Positions 37,060-63,043 of a DNA stretch of 64,000 bases are shown here, one piece after another (the first letter of the stretch is position 1; every line of letters begins with the position of its first letter). A program made the position numbers and the translations under genes. The notes beneath the pieces were generated by a model, which ran no database searches, had not been told where the DNA came from, and worked only from the letters and a program-made list of their open reading frames with translations. The stretch lies in the IMG/VR virus record IMGVR_UViG_3300028840_002431, positions 124,001-188,000 of that record. The stretch is one strand, 5' to 3'.

Positions 37060-37062
37060 CGC

Positions 37063-37287
37063 ATGGCGCTGGACCAACGGATACCTGCCCCTGGCTACAT
37101 CGTTTGCGTCAAATGCGACCACCTCTGGGTCACGTACTATACGAGTCCGACTCTCCTTTGCGAGCGTTGCAAGACCAATCCCCTGTGTTGGGCCTGTCCC
37201 TCTGATACCCTCATATGCCCTGGCTCGTGTGAGCATCAACGGGAGCCGGGGACCTCTCCTCTAACCCTCTGGGACCACGTGAGGTAG
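37063..37287 (+). CDS. NPLCWxCP zinc-finger family, LWDH-tagged
   Basis: CxxC..W..CxRCxxNPLCWACP..ICPGxCxH..TLWDHV. Confidence 0.7.
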   Translation: MALDQRIPAPGYIVCVKCDHLWVTYYTSPTLLCERCKTNPLCWACPSDTLICPGSCEHQREPGTSPLTLWDHVR

Positions 37288-37639
37288 CCATTTGGACCAT
37301 CTAGAAGCCATCCTCCGTAGGCTCCACTCCCTGGAACGTGCCAACAAGCGTCTGACACGGCGCGTCTCGACGCTGGAGAATCAAGTAGCCGTGGCCCCTC
37401 CCTGTCCAGGCCCTACCGCTTTTGACTCCTCCATCGAGGTTGTCTGCCCTACCTGCAAGGCCAAGCCCTTCGAGCCATGTGTCACTGCCTCTGGTTCCAA
37501 GCCGGGCACTGTCCTTCATTACATTCATTCTCCCCGTGGCGATTTGTTCCGGCGTGCCAAGCGGGCTAAACGTAAGAAGTGATACTAAATCCGGCGCGTG
37601 CTCGACGCTTCCCGGCCGTTCGGTGTAACATTTGATAAT

Positions 37640-37882
37640 ATGCTCCCTCCCGTTTGTTTCGAATGCGGTCGTGTCCATGTCGCTGTGAGAAAAGCTCCCC
37701 GTGACAGCATGGGTCTTTGCCAGCGTTGTCTTGGTAATCCTCATTGCTGGGACTGCCCTGACGATGCTCTGGCCACGGGTATTATTTGCCCCGGTCCCGG
37801 CCCTGGTGTGTGCGACCACGTACGGAGTAGCTTCACTCTATGGCGGGCCTTAAAATCAACTTCCGACGCGGGGCGGCCATGA
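37640..37882 (+). CDS. NPLCWxCP zinc-finger family
   Basis: CQRCLGNPHCWDCP; TLWRAL; SDAGRP end. Confidence 0.7.
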   Translation: MLPPVCFECGRVHVAVRKAPRDSMGLCQRCLGNPHCWDCPDDALATGIICPGPGPGVCDHVRSSFTLWRALKSTSDAGRP

Positions 37883-38258
37883 GTAACCGTTCTCCCATCC
37901 CCTATTGCCTTCACTGCAAGGAATGGCTCCGTCCGGAACAACTCGTGGAGCATTACCCAGACACTCCGGGGACCGAATATCTTTGCGCCCTTTGTTTCAA
38001 GCGGCTCCCTTTGGCCAGTAAGCGTCCCAGTGTCCTGGGGCACGTCAGGTGCCCTCGATGTGGGTCCATGGCGTCCGAACAGTGGAGGAATGCTACCGTC
38101 GATATCGGCGGTAGCAATACCCTGACCTTTTTCGAGTGCGGCACGAGGGTTCTCGACTTCCCTCTGGGCCTGAACCATCCACATGCGGTTCATCATGGCA
38201 GCGGTTGTATCAGCACCACTCTCTGGGACCATATTACTAACTCCGACGGGGGTCCCTG

Positions 38259-38516
38259 ATGTCTCTTTGCGCACAATGCGGCCAAGTCTGGACCACCCCC
38301 GCTCATTGGAGAGGTCTCCATGTCTGGGCAGACGCTCCGGTGAAAGGCGAGCGTCGATGCTGGCGATGTCAGGGCGACCCCTTGTGTCTGGACTGCCCCG
38401 CCGCAATCCTGATATCCACAATCTCCCACACCTGTCCGTCCGAACCTGAGGAGTGTTTCCACCGGGCCAAGCCATTGACATTATGGGGTGCCATTTCCGA
38501 CGCGGGGCGGCTATGA
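38259..38516 (+). CDS. NPLCWxCP zinc-finger family
   Basis: CWRCQGDPLCLDCP; TLWGAI. Confidence 0.7.
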   Translation: MSLCAQCGQVWTTPAHWRGLHVWADAPVKGERRCWRCQGDPLCLDCPAAILISTISHTCPSEPEECFHRAKPLTLWGAISDAGRL

Positions 38517-38688
38517 AACTATACGTACGTGAAGGTTGGTTGACTGGCTTCGTAACCGGGGCCTTCATAGTTGCTGCCACCACACTCATGAGTGAAAAGC
38601 ATTGGGTCCCGGCGACCGTCTTCATGGTCCTCTCCCTTGGGATAATGGCCCTCGAACTCTATGTAGCTAACTCCGACGCGGGGCGGCC

Positions 38689-39108
38689 ATGAAGTCTCCT
38701 CACTCATATTGGTCATGCCTCAGTGAGGACGAGAAGAAGTTCATCCTCTCTTTGGCCGCTAATCTCTCCAAGACGCTTGGCATCGAGCACCCTCCCGGAG
38801 TTAATATTATCAAGTACGCCATGACCTCACTTATCCAGGACGTTCACTCCCACCGGGACATCAAGACTCAAAAGCCTCCCGCTCCGGATGGTGTTCTCGC
38901 CTGTCTCAAGTGCTCCCAGGTTTGGGTCCCGGCCGGGACTCTCTACTGCCAGCGGTGTGAGGGTAATCCCCTGTGTTGGGACTGCCCTGCCCAAAACCCT
39001 GACTGGCGGACCGGGCATTCCCTCGTGTGCCGTGGCTCATGCGACGACCAGAAGAAAACTATTTGGGAGCACTTGATAAAATCAACTACCGACTTGGAAT
39101 CGGTTTAA
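38689..39108 (+). CDS. NPLCWxCP zinc-finger family with extra N-terminal domain
   Basis: CQRCEGNPLCWDCP; TIWEHL. Confidence 0.7.
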   Translation: MKSPHSYWSCLSEDEKKFILSLAANLSKTLGIEHPPGVNIIKYAMTSLIQDVHSHRDIKTQKPPAPDGVLACLKCSQVWVPAGTLYCQRCEGNPLCWDCPAQNPDWRTGHSLVCRGSCDDQKKTIWEHLIKSTTDLESV

Positions 39109-39574
39109 CCCAGAGAGTGATTAATGGCTTGTTCCCTCTGTAACGGCACCAAGCGTATCAAGATGCAGTTCTCCTTACCTACCGAGAGTGAGGCGGCCCG
39201 GCTTGCCGAACTCGACCCCGACACTCCCATATACCGTGACCCCGTGGCCATGGGCCTTACCCTTCCCAAGCCGTTACGCGAGGACTTGGAGCAAGGTTGG
39301 GACAGGGAGTGCCCCCGTTGCTCTTCCGACGCGGGGCGGCCATGACCATCTATTGCTACAACCGGTTCAAGGAGGATGGCGTTGGTCCTAATATTTACCA
39401 CGCTCTGAAAGCGACCTTCATGAGCACGGGCGACAGTAATCGAACCCACTGTGGCGTGGATCTCCCGTCTTCCGTTATCCGTGTTACCGAGTGGCCGCCC
39501 AAGGGGATGCGTAAGTGCAAGCGATGTTTCCGTGACCTTTGGGACCATATTATCAACTCCGAAGCGGGGCGATC

Positions 39575-39841
39575 ATGACCGGTATCGTTTGGCAAGACAT
39601 GGTAGTCGCGGGCGCTAACCTGCTATTCGCCTACTCCATTCTCACTCAAGTCGTCCATGGCTTCCGGGAGAAGAAGGGCTTCATCCTCCTACGTACCTCA
39701 GGGCCGACCACTCTGGGTTTGTACGCCATGGCTGTCGCTTTCTTCACCATCCCCCTCTTCTACTCCGCCTCAGTGGCCGCGTTCAATGCGACCCTCTGGC
39801 TTCTCCTCTTCATCCAACGGCTCATTTACGAGAAGGCGTAG
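39575..39841 (+). CDS. Three-TM membrane protein (PQ-loop/SemiSWEET-like)
   Basis: Three hydrophobic helices; 'SILTQV' at the PQ position. Confidence 0.5.
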   Translation: MTGIVWQDMVVAGANLLFAYSILTQVVHGFREKKGFILLRTSGPTTLGLYAMAVAFFTIPLFYSASVAAFNATLWLLLFIQRLIYEKA

Positions 39842-39849
39842 TTGATAAA

Positions 39850-40068
39850 ATGCCTCTGTGTTCTCGTTGCGAACGTATCTGGGTCCCCAAGAGGGCCGTG
39901 ACCGAACACGGCGATTACGTTTGCCTCCGTTGCAAGAGCGACCCCTGGTGTTGGGACTGCCCTGCCAAGTCGGTCCCGCCTTTCCAAACCGGGCACATCT
40001 GTAAGGACGGCTGTGTTCACCGCCGCCCGCCCCTGACCCTCTGGGCCGCCCTTTCGGGGGGCGACTGA
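39850..40068 (+). CDS. NPLCWxCP zinc-finger family
   Basis: CLRCKSDPWCWDCP; TLWAAL. Confidence 0.7.
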   Translation: MPLCSRCERIWVPKRAVTEHGDYVCLRCKSDPWCWDCPAKSVPPFQTGHICKDGCVHRRPPLTLWAALSGGD

Positions 40069-42875
40069 TGGCTTGGGTCGAAGTCGATGGTCCCACCAGC
40101 ACCTTTCCAAAGGAGGACATCCTTGGTTTCTGCGACATTTGCAGACGTAAGATTACCCGCACCTCCGGTCAACTCCGAGGTGTCGCCTTTATGGGCCGCA
40201 CGGGTGTCGTTTGCTCCGACGAGTGTCACAACAAGTGGCAGAAGAGCTTTGGCCCCAAGGACCTCTGGGACCATCTTTTGGAGGACGATTAGTGGACTGG
40301 TGGACATCAGAATCCCAGAGGCTCCGTAAGTCGTGGAACCGAGCCAGATACAAGCCTCGTTGCCGTGTCTGCGGTGCCGTCTGGACCACCGTGGAGAAGG
40401 CCAAGGGTTGCGAACGTAGCCACGGATACGGACACTATTCCGTGGTGAGCGGGGTGACTGCCCTTTGCCCTCTATGTAAACAGTCGTTCACCCCTGAGTT
40501 CGCCGGTCAACAATACTGTGCTCACGATTGTGGTCACTACCCACCCCTGACATTATGGAGAGCGTTGAGAGTTGATTTTATCAACTAAGGGTCCCGGTGT
40601 AAGAATACCTAGAAGCGATAGCTTTTTCGGATAATGAAGCTAGACGATCACAAGTTCAGACGGACTTCGAGTCCCATCCTCCGGAAGCGGTACTCGTGGC
40701 ATATTATGGAACGAGACGACAACATTCCCGTGTGCAAGCGGTACTTCGTGCCCGTTGGCGACCAAAAGTACGAAGAGGAGGTGAACACTCTCGAAGGGAT
40801 CAAGGGCAAAGTTTGCAAGAAGTGTTCTCAGATAGTCTCCCAGCGTATGTCTCTCTGGGACCATTTGGCGCGAGGCGAGACATGAAAGGCTATGCGTTCA
40901 AAGACGGCCCGGTCGTCAGAGTCGTTATCACAGCCGACATGGACAAGGCCCTCCGGAGGCTCGAAGAGATCACGGGCGAGCGGATTAACCGTCACGAGAT
41001 AGTCATCCTCGATGAAGACTCCGTCCTGACGATTGAGTACCACGTAGACTTCGACGGGCTTCTGGCCCCGCTTTGCCCCGACAACGTCACCATCACCGAT
41101 GACAAGACCCGAGTCCTTTGGGACCACGTCTCCGAGACGGGAGGCGACGAATGAGGGCCTACATCTGGCAAGACGCCATGGAGACCGTGGTTGTTATGGC
41201 CTCAAGTGGGATAGAGGCCGCCGTTCACGTTTGCGAGGTCATCAAAGCACCTGTCAAGCCCTCCGATCTCGTCTCCGTGTGTGTGGACCAGACCGTGACA
41301 ATTCCTTACAACAAGAAACGAGACCCCGTATACACAAGGCATAGAAGACGTTCGAGTAAGCCACTCCTCTGGGATCACTTGACGGACGGCAAATGAGTAA
41401 ACGGTATTACAAGATTCAGATCTTCCAGAGGGACGTTAATCACCCGGACCAGGGTACGTGGGCAGACTTCCCGTTAGCCGGGACAATGGGCTACGACGTG
41501 ATCCCGTCCTCTTTTACCACCCACAACGCGGCTAAAGACATCGTGCGACGATGGGCGCTGAAGCCAGAGGACGGCTACCGGATAATCGAGTGTGAGGGGG
41601 CGGACCTCTTCGATCACCTGAGGTGCGACAATGCCTAAGTTAGACATAAAAGTCATCCACATGCCCTCCCCTGGCATGACCCGTTGCATCACCTGTGGCG
41701 AGGAGGTTCCCGTCTCCGAGGCCGCCATGAATATCCCGGTGCCCAACGGGGGCGGCTACGGCCTTTGCTCACAAGCCTGTGAAGAGGTCGATTTCCGGAC
41801 GGCCATGCATGAAGACGTTCCCCGTAAGCTCAACCTTTATGACTCTCTCCGCGAACCCGTCTTTGCTATTTGCGGCCACTGCCGACAACCCATCGAGGGC
41901 GACCCACCCGTCTGCCAGTGTTATGATGGTAAGAAGACATTCCACGACAAGAACCTCTGGGATCACCTGAAATGAACTGTCAGGTTTGCAACACCCCTTT
42001 GCCGGAAAGGATACTCCCCGGCTTCGTTAACGGCTTTCGGGTCTATGTGTGCTCTAGGGAATGCCTCTTTGAGCGGCAACGTAGGGCGAACTTTATGAGA
42101 GTGCGTCTCCGGATGGTGACGGTCAAAACCCTCTGGGATCACTTGAGAGATGAGAGATGAATATCCTTAGTCAAATCGCGGTGGTACTTCTCCTGGCCCT
42201 GGCTATCACTGGCCTCTGGGGTCTCGTTCTATTCCTGGGGTATCGGCGGGAACTGAAACGCTGGCTCAAGATCGGTAAGCCAAAACCCAAGAGCGAACTG
42301 ACCCTCTCTCAAAGCTGGAAGGACGAAGGCTGGGAGATTCGAGAGGAGAACGGCGTCTCGTACAAGGTCCTTCCCGAAGAGAAGTTTCTGGGCCGACCGG
42401 GTATCCTACGATTTGACACCCCAAAGAAGCTACAGCGCCGTGAGTGAGCCGAAACGTTACAGAGTGCGTATCTGGAACACGGACCAGCAAAACTGGGTAT
42501 ACAACGTGCTCTCTTTTGCCTCTCTGGGCGACGCCCTGACTGAAAGCCGTCGGTGGTATGGGTCCAAGTGGGACCGTTACTGGAACAAAGAGTATTTTCA
42601 GATCGTCCGAACCGACACTCGAATCCCTGTGCGCCCCGCCATGTTGGCCGGACCATGCACCCTCTGGGACCACCTGAAAGAAATATGAGTCAAATCCCCC
42701 AACCATGGGCACACAATCAGTGTTCTGTCTGCGATAAGCCCCTTAAAGCCGCCGTGTGGCACCAGGATGTGAAGACGGCCTTGGTCATCTGCTCCAAGCG
42801 GTGTTATGAATATTACCTCCGAGAGTCCAGGTGCGGGAACTTCCCGCTGACTCTGTGGAGGTGTTTGGAGAACAC

Positions 42876-46853: not shown

Positions 46854-49800
46854 TATGCCCCGGTGTATCGCATGTGAAAAGGATTTCGAGAGCGACACCC
46901 GTGACGGGTGGGCATGGTGTTATGATTGTCTCCCCGAGAGCGCCATGACTGAACAGGAATGCTCGTGGCCACAGCCAGATCGACTTCATCGGGTTCGTTC
47001 GCTGCTTTCACGATAACGAGGTCGGAGAAACCATGATCGTTGTCCTCAAGGTAGCCACTGCCCTGTTGGCCCTGTTCGGCCTGATATGCCTGTTGGACGC
47101 TGCCCGTATAATCGTCCGACACTTTTGGAGACGGATGCGTAATGGCTGAGTTACATTCACACCTGGACCTGGAGTACCACGAGGAGCGGCTGAACCTCGA
47201 CAAAGAATACACCAAGGCACGTCACTGGAAAGAAGAGTACATCACGAAGTTAGAGAAGGAGCCTCTCCACGTTGACTTGGCCCGTCGTGTTAAAAAGAAG
47301 ATGGCCGAGATAAGGCGGCCACTGACCCTCTGGGATCATCTGAAAGATGAGTCCTTTCTGGCGGTGTAATATATCTGAAAGGCAAATCATGGCGAAGAAA
47401 GACGAGAATTCACGAGAGTTAAAACCGGGCGAGATCGACGAAGCGCTCAACTTTGTCCAGGGCTTGTTACAAGGCGGCTCCCCCGATGCGAATATGGACA
47501 ACCCCATGGTTGCCGGTGTTGTCCGCACAATCGCCCCCAAGCCCAACCCCGGCTTCACAAAAGGTGAGCCGATGAACCGAGCCGAGTTCCGGAGCCTCAA
47601 GCCGGGCGACTGGTTCTGGGTCTACTGGGCCAAGGACGATAACCCGGAAGATGTTCGGTTTAATAACCCGGAACAAGTCCTGGAGTTCGTGCCGGGTGTT
47701 GGTAGAAAAAAGGGCTACGTCCGTACAGAGGACGCCGACTGGGAAGAACCAATCGACGAAACCGGCAACGACGCCGACACGAGCCGGGGTTACGCCTACT
47801 ATTACCACGTGGAGAAATAGGAGTTAGAAATGGTCTACTACTTTCTGAGTGTGCTGGAGAGCCTAGACTCAGCCTTGGACATCGTGGTCGGTGTCGGCTT
47901 TCTGGGTATTATTGCCTACGTCGTCGGGGGTGTCATCAAAGCCAGCGAGGAGAGCGCTTTCCTCCAACGTATCGGCCGGATCGCCGCCATAACCGGGATG
48001 GTTGCTCTTGGGGTTGACGCCTTGGTCCCCACCCAGGAACGGCTTCTCCGAGCCTATCTCATGGTCCATGGGGCAGAAGCGCTCGAATCCAACAACTCGA
48101 AACGGGCTGTCGAAGACTTCACCGAACGGGTGGATGCGATCGTTACCGCCGTGCAAGCGTCCAACCGGGCACTCGAAGGAAAGACATACTGATGGCTCTG
48201 AAGGATGAGTACTACAACTTCGTCCTGGACGAAGAGCCTCCGGACCCACCCGTCGAGAAGCGGATTCTCTTTGCCATTGTTCAAGACTTCACTGACCGTC
48301 GGGGTCTCCGTCAGGAGTGGGAGCAAACCGACGAAGATATCCAAGACGAGATGTTGGAGACGTGGCTTCAACTCATAAAAGATAACCTGGGGAGTTAGAA
48401 TTATGCTTCCCTGTGACCACGGCCGGTGTGAGGTATGCGAGAAGGTCTACTGGATTCCAGCCGGGGTCGGGCCAAGGTTTTGCTCCTCTGGGTGTTGGGA
48501 GTACATGGCCATGGAGTCGTTCCTTAAGGAGTTCCACTACCTCTCGAACATGAAACTATCTCTCTGGGACCACCTCAGGATAAGTTAGAATGATCAACTT
48601 TCTCTGTAAGCTGGGTTTGCACCGATGGGTTCCGAGCACCTACCACGACTGGTGTTTTTTTGGGATCAATATCACTTGCGCCCGCTGCCACGAACCACAC
48701 CCGGCTTATATCACCAGACCTGAGGACGAATGCTCCGAGTAAATAAAATACTCAAAGACGCCATAGCGGCCGACACAGATAGTCTTAAAAAGGTTATCCG
48801 CGACTACAAGGATCAAGACGATCTTGACGACACAGAGATTGACATCCTTGTCCTCGTTTGCGCTCTGCACCAAGCCAGAGTTGATATGTTCAAGGCTCTG
48901 GATGGAAAATTTGCTCTCCACAAGCGGTTAGCCAAGATCGATGTTTCACGTGAAACGCCGGACGGGGCCGCTATCGAGACCGTGTACCTCCCGGCCAATT
49001 GTGCCCACATGCGGACAGACGGTGCTCACAGTTATTGCGGTATCCAGAAGGGTGAGCACTTCTGGCCCTCCGAGAAACCACACGATCGCCAGTGGTGCCC
49101 CTTCTGTGTGGAAGTGGCCGAGCACCGTGTGCCGCCCCAATTTCTCCGAGAGACTAAGATTGTTTGGGGCATTTAACTAACTTGAGGCAGACATGTCAGG
49201 GAACAAGAAAGACCACGTTGAATTTAACTACTACCCAAAAGACGCCAGCCCTGGTGACGGGACTTTGCGCCGTACTGTGCTCTTAAAAGATATCGCATCC
49301 GTTGACGAAAGAGACAAAAGGACGTGCGTCGTTACCATTGGGCGCAGAGACAGTACTAATATTTTGGTCAACGAGCCGTACGACTTTGTTATTAAAAGAC
49401 TTGGTTGGACCAAAAGGATACGGCGTAAGAGGGAGAAGAAGGGGAAGGAGAACGGGAACCAATGATTTATGTCGCTTTCATGGGATTGGCTGTCATTGCT
49501 ATTTTAACAACTGTGGCGGCCCACTACTACTCCAAGGCTTCCAAGTCCGAGGCCGCGCTGAGTGGTATCAAGGCTCAACTAGAACAGGCCGAGAACCAAA
49601 GAAAGATCTTCGCGGAGTCCAACCGCCGGATCATCGAACAACTCGAAAAGGTCCGTAACATGCTCAAGGAGGGTAAGACCATGAGCACCATCGAATCCGA
49701 GTTGGAGCGTATGGAGGAACCGGAAAAGACTCTGTACGATCATCTACAAGAGGAACGCCCTCAAGAGGAGCCTTCTTAGTTTTATCAACTATGCCTCTCA

Positions 49801-61343: not shown

Positions 61344-63043
61344 CGTCTGACCGGGATTACGTCCTTACCCCGGAACTTGATTCGATACCCTCTGTCGAGT
61401 TTGACAGCTTCTTCGATCTCTTCGGGTTCAACGTCAAGAAGCTCTGCTAATTCCGCAGCGTCGGCGGGGGAGCGTTTCACGGCACGGACGATGTCCTGGA
61501 CCAGGATGTCAATATCACGTAAGCGGCGGATTGCGTCTTTGTCCATACCTACGTCGCGTATAAAAACAAGCGGGATGCCTTGTGGTTGGCATCCCGCTTG
61601 AGAAGTGGCCTCGTAACCCAGCGCCCTTTCGAGGCCAACCTAAGCAAGGTGGGCCTGGGTCTCGTGTCTTACAGTTCTCCGTACTTGGCAGCGTCACGGG
61701 CAGCGTCGGCCCGCATGATGGCCCGGTCCTGGTCCTCGCACTCTTCGGAGCAGTAGTCCTCATCCCAACAGTGAAGGTCCTCATCCAGCTTGAAAGCGTG
61801 GCCGCACATGGCGCACACGGTCAGCTTCTCGACGCCGTCCGTCTCACCACCGAGCCAGGACTTGGTCCCGTTCACGGGCGGGTAGAAGGGGCCTTCTTCG
61901 GCCTCGACCTCTTTGCCCCCGAACACGCGCCGGGTGGCCTCGATTACGTAACGCTCGCAGCCCTCAATACGCTCGAAGCCAGTCACAATACCTTCGACGT
62001 AACAGGCACGCTCGCCGGACTCGTCCTTGCCGTGGAAGGGGAAGTCGTGGGAGCGGACCGTGTCACCAACTTTGATTTCGTTATTTCCGTTGTTGTTCAT
62101 ATACGGTCTACCCCCATGGTCAGGTGAATCTAAAGTTTAAATTGCCGCTTCCGTGAGTTTTCTGAACTCTCCCATCCAGGAGCGGTCCAGCCGACGGCGC
62201 TTCTTCTGGACCGTGTGAGGCTCACCGTCCTCGTCGATCTCGGTCTTGAAAATCGGATTCGCCTCACGCCATGCGGTTTGGGAAGCCACGAACTCAGCCT
62301 TGTTCTGTTTGGCTTGGGCCACGAGGGCGTCGAAGTCCACGTCGGGAACCTTGCCTGTGTCCAGCCAAGCGTGGATCAGGTAAAAGAAGCGGTCCCGTGG
62401 CTCGAACTCGTAGTCCGACTTCTTGTAGAACTTGACGCTGTTGACGGCGTGGCCGCCCGCAGTCGGCTCCATGCTGATCCGGCCAAGCTGGACACCCTCG
62501 TGCTGGACGAATATTCTCACCCAGCCGCGACCGGCCCGGACCGGTTTAAACCGGTACTCCGGAAAGGCAGACTCTAACGCGGTTTTGAAGGTTTCGATTG
62601 TCGTCATGTTATCGCCCCTGGTAGGAGTAGGCTTCGCCCTCGCTCACCCTGCGGCCCATCTCGCGCTCCAACTCACGAAGCTTTCGGTTCAGGGAGGCAG
62701 CCCGTTTGCGCACCTGAGCGGGCGGCAGTTCGCCGTCGCAACTGAGGTTTTCCGGACTCAGGCAGCAATAGACGCTCAGGATGTCGTCCATGATTTCCGC
62801 TTCGGAACGCTTCGGCTTGGGAGCCTCCGGAGCGGGAGCCGACGACCCGTTGGCCGGGCGGCACAGGCTCTTGGCCACCTTCCATTCGGTGCCGATCGCG
62901 TAGTCCTTCTGGGTGCCCCTGGACTCGTCCTGACGCACCTTCACGGTCTTGCGGTTGACCTTGACCACCGTGCCGTGGGTTTGCTCACCGTTGGGCCGCC
63001 CGAAGACGACCTTCATGCCTTTGTGGAATTCTTGTGTCATCAT
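61340..63043 (-). other. Four minus-strand hypothetical ORFs (61340-61546 HTH-like, 61669-62100, 62137-62607, 62609-63043)
   Basis: ORFs with TTTAGA...GGGGTAGA motifs just upstream of 62100 and 63043. Confidence 0.65.

What the first reader, a model, noticed from the sequence alone, without database searches (positions are those of the whole stretch)
37862..39578. 21-bp DNA repeat at consecutive gene junctions: cassette-like architecture
TCCGACGCGGGGCGGCCATGA supplies the upstream gene's last codons (SDAGRP*), a G-rich RBS and the ATGA stop/start overlap. It is exact at 37862, 38672 and 39325, near-exact at 38496 and 39558, and decayed at 38242. Unlike LWDHL, the codons are identical, so this is a DNA-level repeat. 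It also ends untagged genes (38513-38692, 39124-39345). Inference: recombination joints that let single-gene cassettes be inserted, excised or shuffled while staying translationally coupled, an integron-like logic with no integrase visible here.
Basis: partly seen in the sequence, partly recalled or inferred. Interest (0 to 1): 0.68.

Follow-up and report, generated by a model that had tools for sequence, protein, structure and literature searches.

The report
Repeated gene-junction linker, jumbo phage
A 21-base stretch that ends one small gene and starts the next is copied at six neighbouring gene borders of a 416-kb phage, and natural variants show the copies being overwritten by recombination, so it looks like a short in-frame splice point for reshuffling genes, not an integron.

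Summary
TCCGACGCGGGGCGGCCATGA is exact at 37862, 38672 and 39325. It has 1 mismatch at 38496, 3 at 39558, and is decayed at 38242. None is expected by chance, and there are none elsewhere in the 416.5-kb phage record. Every copy is read in one frame as the tail of the upstream gene, and in the five intact copies ATGA starts the next gene. The codons are identical, whereas 31 LWDHL tags use 20 encodings, so this is a DNA-level repeat spread by copying.

Near-identical contigs from other samples show exchange at the copies:
- One strain has a 3-base patch that turns copy 3 into the copy-6 form.
- Another strain has the whole g7/g8 junction replaced between almost identical flanks.
- A minority contig diverges right after the LWDH codons of g8 and meets the repeat again 263 bases later.

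Gene order g7-g15 is nevertheless the same in every long contig. The genome has no tyrosine or serine recombinase, and the copies share no attC-like hairpin, promoter or terminator. A RecA/UvsX-type recombinase is present. The nearest related phage has the tag array but no such repeat.

Verdict: a young, local junction linker spread and homogenised by general recombination. It works like T4 PeSLs or lambdoid boundary sequences. The integron analogy is not supported.

The parts
37862..37882 (+). Copy 1, exact. It forms the tail (SDAGRP*) of g7 (37640-37882), and its ATGA starts g8.
   Evidence: In strain contig L041 this junction is replaced by TCCGGAGCAGGGCCATGGCTAACGGT, while the flanks stay about 95-100% identical.
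38242..38261 (+). Copy 2, decayed (TCCGACGGGGGTCCCTGATG). It forms the tail of g8 (LWDHITNSDGGP*), with a TGATG overlap onto g9.
   Evidence: family D3/D6.
38496..38516 (+). Copy 3, one mismatch (GGCT). It forms the tail of g9 (SDAGRL*), and its ATGA starts g10.
   Evidence: In Ga0180434_10000086, bases 38510-38512 read ATC instead of GCT, which gives the 3' half of copy 6.
38672..38692 (+). Copy 4, exact. It forms the tail of the untagged membrane-type gene g10 (38513-38692), and its ATGA starts g11.
   Evidence: One search gave only weak Pfam hints (DUF5373, DUF2244) for g10.
39077..39093 (+). Half copy in the tail of g11 (38689-39108). TAAAATCAACTaCCGAC matches the g7 end and then diverges into a small hairpin and TAA. 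This is the only junction of the run without a stop/start overlap (g12 starts at 39124).
   Evidence: (D17), (stem 39088-39104).
39325..39345 (+). Copy 5, exact (23 bases shared with copy 1). It forms the tail of the untagged g12 (39124-39345), and its ATGA starts g13.
   Evidence: D4. The minority contig of run X3 matches 39326-39347 after 263 foreign bases.
39558..39578 (+). Copy 6, three mismatches (TCCGAAGCGGGGCGATCATGA). It forms the tail of g13 (LWDHIINSEAGRS*), and its ATGA starts the membrane-type gene g14 (39575-39841).
37640..39841 (+). The run of eight small genes g7-g14 joined by the copies. g7, g9 and g11 (with g5 37063-37287 and g15 39850-40068) are paralogues with a CxxC...CxRCxGxPxCWDCP pattern. 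g8 is a double zinc ribbon. g10 and g14 are hydrophobic. g12 and g13 are orphans.
39073..39087 (+). Exact copy of the phage's palindromic motif TTGATAAAATCAACT. Its right arm ATCAACT directly abuts the repeat in the half copy, and a degenerate form does so in copies 1 and 6.
38221..38232 (+). LWDH codons of g8. The last base shared with the alternative haplotype in run X3 is 38232.
   Evidence: records 5, 7, 8, and the joint 38232 -> 39326.

Best explanation
The repeat is a portable junction linker. It is a 21-28 bp module holding the last six or seven codons of the upstream gene, a G-run that can serve as a Shine-Dalgarno site, and the ATGA stop/start overlap.

It was copied onto six or seven consecutive borders of unrelated small genes in a lineage-specific, fast-changing accessory array of a 416-kb phage. 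Copying and continued homogenisation happen by general (homologous or short-patch) recombination. This is presumably driven by the phage's own RecA/UvsX-type recombinase or by template switching, not by a site-specific enzyme.

Because the module is read in one fixed frame and ends at the next start codon, any crossover inside it leaves both flanking ORFs and their translational coupling intact. Exchanges here therefore yield viable recombinants more often than exchanges elsewhere.

Shown: the copies, their frame, their DNA-level identity, and patch events at two copies in natural strains. Also shown: a second haplotype that carries the repeat in another context, the absence of integrases, and the presence of a recombinase.

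Inferred: that crossovers between copies move whole genes, and that the module began as the leader behind the palindromic motif TTGATnnnATCAACT and was later read through by upstream genes.
For: 1. Spread by copying.
- 21/21 identity, including all synonymous sites, occurs between junctions of non-homologous genes, with sharp edges.
- P = 4e-4 per pair if only the peptide were selected.
- Paralogue bodies are only about 34-42% identical in protein.

2. Exchange at the copies in nature.
- Ga0180434_10000086 differs from the window at only 8 of 12,324 bases. Three of these are adjacent (38510-38512) and convert copy 3 to GCGGGGCGATCATGA, the copy-6 form.
- Ga0180433_10058960 has about 12 differences in the 28 junction bases, against 8 in the 156 bases before it (Fisher P = 8e-7) and none in the 200 bases after it. 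Both ORFs are kept intact.
- About 10 variant events were seen in 12.3 kb. Two hit the roughly 1% of sequence occupied by the copies.

3. Run X3 (SRR6963352) holds a 317-base contig at depth 5, against 10.6 for the main path and 18.2 for the shared left flank. It leaves the main path after 38232, carries 263 other bases and then matches 39326-39347, which is the repeat plus CC. The repeat therefore also closes a different gene in another haplotype.

4. The half copy at 39077-39093 shows homology breaking inside the repeat.

5. A RecA-family ORF of 431 aa is present (144.5 bits).

6. The setting is a hyperplastic array. The cluster genes have no relatives in IMG/VR or in 5.8 billion proteins. 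The related phage G001 (76% RecA identity) has the tag array but other genes.
Against: - No gene gain or loss with both ends in repeat copies was seen. The order g7-g15 is identical in every long contig recovered.
- The left edge of the X3 variant lies after the LWDH codons, not in a copy, and its 263 bases could not be read.
- Clustered substitution patches also occur outside the copies, for example at 38381-38393 in g9. The junction patches may therefore be part of a general patchy mosaicism.
- 21 bp is short for efficient homologous recombination.
- The relative G001 has no comparable junction repeat, so this is not a general feature of such arrays.
- All contigs come from one phage population, in sediment and seawater samples of three sequencing-run studies plus JGI and ENA assemblies. 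These may not be independent.
Confidence: 0.55

Rival explanations
1. Passive relic. The module is an ex-intergenic leader, or the tail of one ancestral gene, that was multiplied by a few recent local duplications or insertions. It has simply not had time to decay, and it neither promotes exchange nor has any function beyond an ordinary RBS.
For: - The copies form a decay series: three exact, then 1 mismatch, 3 mismatches, one decayed and one half copy.
- They are confined to 1.7 kb of one phage and are absent from the relative.
- The cluster holds five local paralogues, so duplication did occur here.
- Gene order is invariant in long contigs.
- The tail peptide is not conserved in natural alleles: SDAGRP, SDAGRL, SDAGRS and PEQGHG.
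Against: - The genes on both sides of most copies are not homologous, so plain tandem duplication does not give this pattern.
- Two of about ten population variants hit the copies. One re-creates another copy's variant and the other swaps the whole junction. This indicates ongoing exchange rather than quiet decay.
Confidence: 0.2
2. Co-regulation element. The 21-mer is kept identical because it works as RNA. It could be a shared operator for a translational repressor or nuclease (RegA/RegB-like logic), or an optimised termination-reinitiation signal. Either would tie the expression of g8, g10, g11, g13 and g14 together.
For: - It overlaps the RBS and start codon, and its 3' edge is exactly the start codon.
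- The 5' eight bases are conserved although they are not needed for SD pairing.
- Identity is at the nucleotide level.
Against: - A natural strain lacks the element at the g7/g8 junction, yet both genes stay intact and under purifying selection.
- SD strength is only average.
- The copies share no RNA structure, and there is no Rfam match.
- No such element exists in the related phage.
- A search for the RegA family found nothing, but its control rang in no genome, so that search is uninformative.
Confidence: 0.15
3. Integron-like site-specific cassette system. The repeats are recognition sites of a dedicated recombinase that inserts and excises single-gene cassettes.
For: - The architecture is superficially cassette-like. 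The genes are small, promoterless and co-oriented, each followed by the same short site.
- The record is only 87% complete, so an enzyme gene could be missing.
Against: - No PF00589 or PF00239 match exists in 416 kb, while the controls rang.
- The copies show no inverted repeat or shared hairpin.
- The sites lie inside coding sequence.
- The copies are absent elsewhere in the genome and in relatives.
- Observed changes are short patches and decay, not clean site-to-site excisions.
Confidence: 0.03

Closest known systems
PeSL regulatory cassettes of T4-type phages (Arbiol et al. 2010, PMC2839356; Comeau et al. 2014, PMC4122927)
   Same: - Repeated short modules at the borders of orphan genes in hyperplastic regions.
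- The module spans the upstream stop, an SD and the downstream start.
- It is proposed to act through general recombination between copies, so that exchanges land in 'acceptable' places.
   Different: - PeSLs are about 100 bp and intergenic. They are defined by a sigma-70-type promoter plus a stem-loop terminator, with about 50 per genome, and mini-circles have been shown experimentally.
- Here the module is 21-28 bp and lies inside the upstream coding sequence. It has no promoter or stem-loop.
- It couples translation rather than transcription, and it exists as 6-7 copies in 1.7 kb of one phage.
Short conserved boundary ('linker') sequences of lambdoid phages (modular theory; cited in PMC3029335 as its refs 21, 22)
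   Same: Short homologies at gene boundaries between otherwise unrelated genes. They are thought to guide homologous recombination and create mosaic joints.
   Different: Those sequences are recognised between different phage genomes at mosaic joints. Here the copies are serial within one genome, they are in-frame coding tails, and evidence for joints at them is limited to patch events and one unresolved haplotype.
Integron attC sites and gene cassettes
   Same: Co-oriented, mostly promoterless small genes, each followed by a repeated site.
   Different: attC sites are imperfect palindromes of 57-141 bp, recombined as folded single strands by an IntI tyrosine recombinase encoded next to attI (established knowledge). 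Neither the structure nor the enzyme is present here.
Ordinary translational coupling by ATGA overlap with an upstream SD
   Same: ATGA overlap, with an SD-like G-run five bases before the ATG. Dozens of other ATGA junctions in the same array work this way without any repeat.
   Different: Ordinary coupled junctions are not identical in sequence to one another. Here 21 bases, including non-SD bases and synonymous sites, are the same.

Membership tests
Integron (attC / IntI) | Tyrosine recombinase (IntI) encoded with the array | tested here: not met
   PF00589 has no match in the 416,539-base record, and the control rang in 14 of 14 genomes. The record is 87% complete.
Integron (attC / IntI) | Sites are imperfect inverted repeats that fold into a hairpin | tested here: not met
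   The 21-mer has no internal dyad. Folds of -50/+30 around seven copies share no structure. No inverted-repeat pair is associated with the copies.
Integron (attC / IntI) | Cassette content differs between strains, with breakpoints at the sites | tested here: inconclusive
   Gene order is identical in all long contigs. One minority contig has 263 foreign bases ending in the repeat, but its left breakpoint lies after the LWDH codons.
PeSL-type regulatory cassette | Sigma-70-like early promoter inside the repeat | tested here: not met
   No promoter-like site lies at any copy.
PeSL-type regulatory cassette | Stable stem-loop (terminator/attenuator) inside the repeat | tested here: not met
   Only the half copy at 39088-39104 carries a small stem.
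PeSL-type regulatory cassette | Located at borders of orphan genes in a hyperplastic region, spanning the upstream stop, SD and downstream start | tested here: met
   The cluster genes have no relatives. The related phage carries other genes in its array.
PeSL-type regulatory cassette | Excised mini-circles formed by recombination between neighbouring copies | not testable with these tools
   Only assembled contigs of the holding runs could be laid. Raw reads or PCR are needed.
Conserved boundary sequences (modular recombination) | Short identical sequence at borders between non-homologous genes | tested here: met
Conserved boundary sequences (modular recombination) | Mosaic joints between related genomes coincide with the sequence | tested here: inconclusive
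   - The divergent patch 37705-37888 of L041 ends at copy 1, and the junction itself is replaced.
- There is a 3-base conversion at copy 3.
- The other joints lie elsewhere: at 38091 (inferred from the contig ends of L039, L041, L032 and L033) and at 38233.
Conserved boundary sequences (modular recombination) | General recombination function available | tested here: met
   RecA-family ORF, 144.5 bits, 431 aa.
Translationally coupled junction | Stop/start overlap with an SD-like sequence in the upstream gene | tested here: met
   ATGA overlap in five copies and TGATG in the decayed one. The G-run pairs with an assumed E. coli-type anti-SD at -6.5 kcal/mol, against a background mean of -4.1. Function was not assayed.

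The most novel reading that the evidence does not exclude
The junction module is the recognition site of a dedicated, still unrecognised phage enzyme that swaps tagged small-protein genes in frame. That would make it a coding-sequence 'integron' for the LWDHL-tagged effector array of jumbo phages, giving the population a shuffled repertoire of host-takeover genes.
Probability: 0.05. Interest if true: 0.85.

Novelty: new variant of a known kind. Interest (0 to 1): 0.45.

Why it matters
Phage genomes are mosaics, but clear examples of short sequences that guide the joints are rare; the boundary-sequence idea is old and mostly unsupported at actual joints (PMC3029335). Here a very short module sits inside coding sequence and carries the stop/start overlap, so an exchange keeps both reading frames and translational coupling.

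Natural strains show the copies being overwritten. If read-level data confirm crossovers between copies, this would be a compact, testable model of how orphan genes are shuffled in giant-phage accessory arrays. It would also be a design hint for seamless in-frame gene swapping. If not, it is a tidy case of a recent local duplication history. In either case it is confined to one phage lineage.

Tried and rejected
- **Scans for the repeat elsewhere.** IMG/VR gave only a 100% identical contig of the same phage, plus two chance hits with a degenerate pattern. The JGI metagenome scan gave the same phage, plus 13 unrelated hits in 60-72% GC bacterial contigs. A few of these happen to be gene junctions, and they share nothing beyond the 20-mer.
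- **Relatives of the cluster genes.** g8, g13 and the five-paralogue profile found nothing in IMG/VR. They found only the phage's own proteins among 5.8 billion. The profile is also absent from the two related complete phages.
- **Recovering the alternative haplotype.**
  - Look-ups of g7 and g8 were not on record.
  - Look-ups of g4, g11 and g14 gave only the standard order.
  - A search with the antisense 294-aa ORF that gene callers predict found one cluster only.
  - The 263 bases of the X3 contig therefore stay unread, and read laying was limited to assembled contigs.
- **Codon-usage scoring of strands.** This was indecisive for the Cys-rich genes. Paralogy and third-position SNPs settled the strand instead.
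- **Known RNA or regulator.** There was no Rfam match. The RegA family search was uninformative because its control rang nowhere.
- **RNA hairpin or attC-like fold.** None is shared among the copies.
- **A stronger-than-usual SD as the reason for conservation.** Rejected, because the pairing energy is average.
- **Other checks.**
  - The Terminase_6N family gave no match and was not pursued.
  - The big representative search, structure prediction and complex prediction were not used, because no claim here rests on them.
Full report
**Context.** The window is bases 124001-188000 of a 416,539-base virus record, which is linear and estimated 87% complete. It is a jumbo phage.
- From about window 9 kb to 56 kb the + strand carries a dense array of small genes. 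About 45 of them end in an LWDHL-like motif one to ten residues before the stop.
- The finding lies in one 3-kb part of this array (37060-40068). That part holds five paralogues of a Cys-rich family with 13 invariant columns, including C..C, CxRC and PxCWDCP. These are g5 37063-37287, g7 37640-37882, g9 38259-38516, g11 38689-39108 and g15 39850-40068.
- They are interspersed with unrelated small genes: g8 (a double zinc ribbon, 37879-38259), g10 and g14 (hydrophobic, 38513-38692 and 39575-39841), and g12 and g13 (orphans, 39124-39345 and 39342-39578).

**The observation.**
- The 21-mer is exact at 37862, 38672 and 39325. It has one mismatch at 38496 and three at 39558, with zero matches in 100 shuffles.
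- A decayed copy lies at 38242.
There the end of g11 follows the end of g7 for 17 bases (16 identical) and then diverges (D17).
- No other copy within three mismatches exists in the genome.
- Every copy is read in the same frame as the tail of the upstream gene. In the five intact copies the ATG of ATGA starts the next gene.
- The claim that this is a DNA-level repeat is sound. With this phage's codon usage, two independent encodings of SDAGRP agree with P = 4e-4. The 31 exact LWDHL tags use 20 different encodings.

**Which strand is coding.** Public gene callers place 294-aa and 147-aa ORFs on the opposite strand here, and codon scoring is indecisive for the Cys-rich genes. The + strand reading is backed by the paralogy. 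It is also backed by a natural g7 allele in which 7 of 8 substitutions are at third codon positions (P = 0.0026).

**What the repeat is not.**
- It has no internal dyad, and seven folded contexts share no structure.
- No promoter-like or terminator-like site coincides with a copy.
- There is no Rfam match.
- The genome has no tyrosine or serine recombinase domain, with controls positive.
- Its SD potential, -6.5 kcal/mol against an assumed E. coli-type anti-SD tail, is average for the array, whose range is -2.4 to -12.1. Many other ATGA junctions in the array work with unrelated purine-rich tails. An RBS alone therefore does not explain 21 identical bases.

**Relatives.**
- The cluster genes have no homologues in IMG/VR or among 5.8 billion proteins apart from the phage itself.
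- Through the phage's RecA/UvsX-type protein I reached related jumbo phages. The closest is G001, a complete genome of 398 kb with 76% identity.
- G001 has at least 40 LWDHL-tagged genes. It has no copy of the 21-mer, no other junction-repeat family, none of the Cys-rich family, and almost none of the cluster genes.
- The repeat is thus young and local, in a hyperplastic region.

**Population evidence.** The same phage occurs at 99.3-100% identity in contigs from several JGI, ENA and Logan assemblies. Gene order g7-g15 is the same in every long contig. The few differences are informative:
- (a) Ga0180434_10000086 differs at 8 of 12,324 bases. Three of these are adjacent (38510-38512, GCT to ATC) and turn copy 3 into TCCGACGCGGGGCGATCATGA, whose last 15 bases equal copy 6.
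- (b) Ga0180433_10058960 carries a divergent patch at 37705-37888.
  - The g7 body has 8 substitutions in 156 bases, nearly all synonymous.
  - The 27-base junction (TTCCGACGCGGGGCGGCCATGAGTAAC) is replaced by TCCGGAGCAGGGCCATGGCTAACGGT, with three indels.
  - g7 then ends KSTPEQGHG*, and g8 starts MANGRSP with an 8-base overlap.
  - The sequence is identical again from 37889 to the contig end (Fisher P = 8e-7 for junction versus body).
  - At least one replacement of the junction as a unit therefore happened after the two alleles split.
- (c) In run X3 (SRR6963352) the left flank has depth 18.2, but the standard path after 38232 has only 10.6. A 317-base contig of depth 5 shares 38203-38232, carries 263 other bases, and then matches 39326-39347, which is the repeat plus CC. 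A second haplotype therefore diverges right after the LWDH codons of g8 and has the same repeat closing a different gene. Depth stays near 11.8 to 41900, so this haplotype probably differs over several kb. Its sequence could not be retrieved.
- (d) Contigs in two further samples end at 38090, and their partners begin one k-mer earlier (at 37950 and 37968). This is most simply read as another branch at 38091, inside g8.
- (e) Patches also occur away from the copies, for example at 38381-38393 in g9, with no donor in the genome.

Counting clusters as events, about ten variants were seen in 12.3 kb, and two fall on the roughly 1% occupied by copies. This count is post hoc.

**Origin.**
- The phage and its relative share a palindromic motif, (A/C)TTGATnnnATCAA(G/C)T. 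It has four exact sites here (27710, 35555, 39073, 40572), against about one expected, and 16 sites in 80 kb of G001. Most are intergenic, and the motif often supplies the TGA stop of a tagged gene.
- The site at 39073 lies in the tail of g11, and its right arm ATCAACT runs straight into the half copy. Copy 1 has a degenerate form (TTAAAATCAACT) and copy 6 has ATTATCAACT in the same place.
- I infer that the 21-mer began as the leader between this motif and a start codon, and that upstream genes later read through it. This is inference.

**Mechanism.** The most economical reading is a junction linker that is spread and homogenised by general recombination.
- Identical 21-28-bp tracts in one orientation and one frame offer short homology for crossovers, gene conversion or template switching.
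- Because each tract ends at the next start codon, recombinants keep both ORFs and their coupling.
- This is how T4-type PeSLs and lambdoid boundary sequences are thought to work. The module fails the defining PeSL features (promoter, stem-loop), so it is an analogue, not a member.
- The integron analogy fails on enzyme and site structure.

Rivals are a passive relic of recent duplications (0.2), a shared RNA operator or reinitiation signal (0.15) and a site-specific system (0.03). The best explanation stands at 0.55.

**Verdict.** It is a new variant of a known kind, of moderate interest. The decisive test is read-level detection of joints between copies, together with resolution of the alternative haplotypes.

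Noticed in passing
whole record; window about 9000-56200 (e.g. 41366-41396, 42127-42160); G001:C1:27900-104500: About 45 small proteins of this phage, and at least 40 of a related 398-kb phage, end in an LWDHL-like motif 1-10 residues before the stop. The tails after it are mostly purine-rich codons that double as the SD of the next gene. The string LWDHL was not found in the phage literature searched.
   Followed up: partly
window 27710, 35555, 39073, 40572; L050/L051 (G001 28603-49230): Palindromic motif (A/C)TTGATnnnATCAA(G/C)T. It has 4 exact sites here (about 1 expected) and 16 in 80 kb of the relative, with compensating arm changes. Most sites are intergenic, sometimes in tandem, and the motif often contains the TGA stop of a tagged gene. 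It is probably a promoter/operator or a hairpin signal of this phage group.
   Followed up: partly
window 37741-38625 (-) and 37301-37744 (-): Public assemblies annotate antisense ORFs of 294 and 147 aa here instead of the + strand genes g5-g10. Paralogy and third-position SNPs favour the + strand, so these small genes are missing from protein databases.
   Followed up: yes
window 37060-40068: A lineage-specific family of five Cys-rich paralogues (C..C, CxRC, PxCWDCP; 13 invariant columns) sits within 3 kb. Some have degenerate tags (LWRAL, LWGAI, LWAAL). It has no homologues in relatives or databases.
   Followed up: partly
window 38381-38393 and 38420 (L033, Ga0180433_10017172): A cluster of six substitutions in g9 (PLCLDCP to PLCQECP), with no donor anywhere in the genome. 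It looks like a short conversion patch from an unsampled relative.
   Followed up: partly
window 38090/38091: Contigs from two samples built by different assemblies both end at 38090, and their partner contigs start one k-mer earlier (37950, 37968). This points to a further unseen variant that branches inside g8.
   Followed up: no
genome 172506-172561 and 186402-186605 (window 48506-48561, 62402-62605); L006, L023: The 173-kb contig IMGVR_UViG_3300017963_000197 is identical to this record up to 172506. It then jumps to 186552-186605 and back, at a 30-base LWDHL-coding repeat. This is either an assembly artefact or a real rearrangement at tag-coding repeats.
   Followed up: no
genome 1-5500 and 416100-416539 (outside the window): Both ends of the record lie in long triplet-periodic (GGTxCTCCTGTT-like, collagen-type) repeats that share 15-mers. 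The record probably breaks inside one repetitive gene of a circularly permuted genome.
   Followed up: no
genome about 66000-94000 (outside the window): Repeated 15-mers of tRNA T-arm type (GGGAATCGAACCC) suggest a cluster of phage tRNA genes. This was not checked with ARAGORN.
   Followed up: no
window 39088-39104: A small stem-loop (ACCGA-CTTGGAA-TCGGT) lies right after the palindromic motif, at the only non-overlapping junction of the run (g11/g12). It may be a transcription-unit boundary.
   Followed up: no
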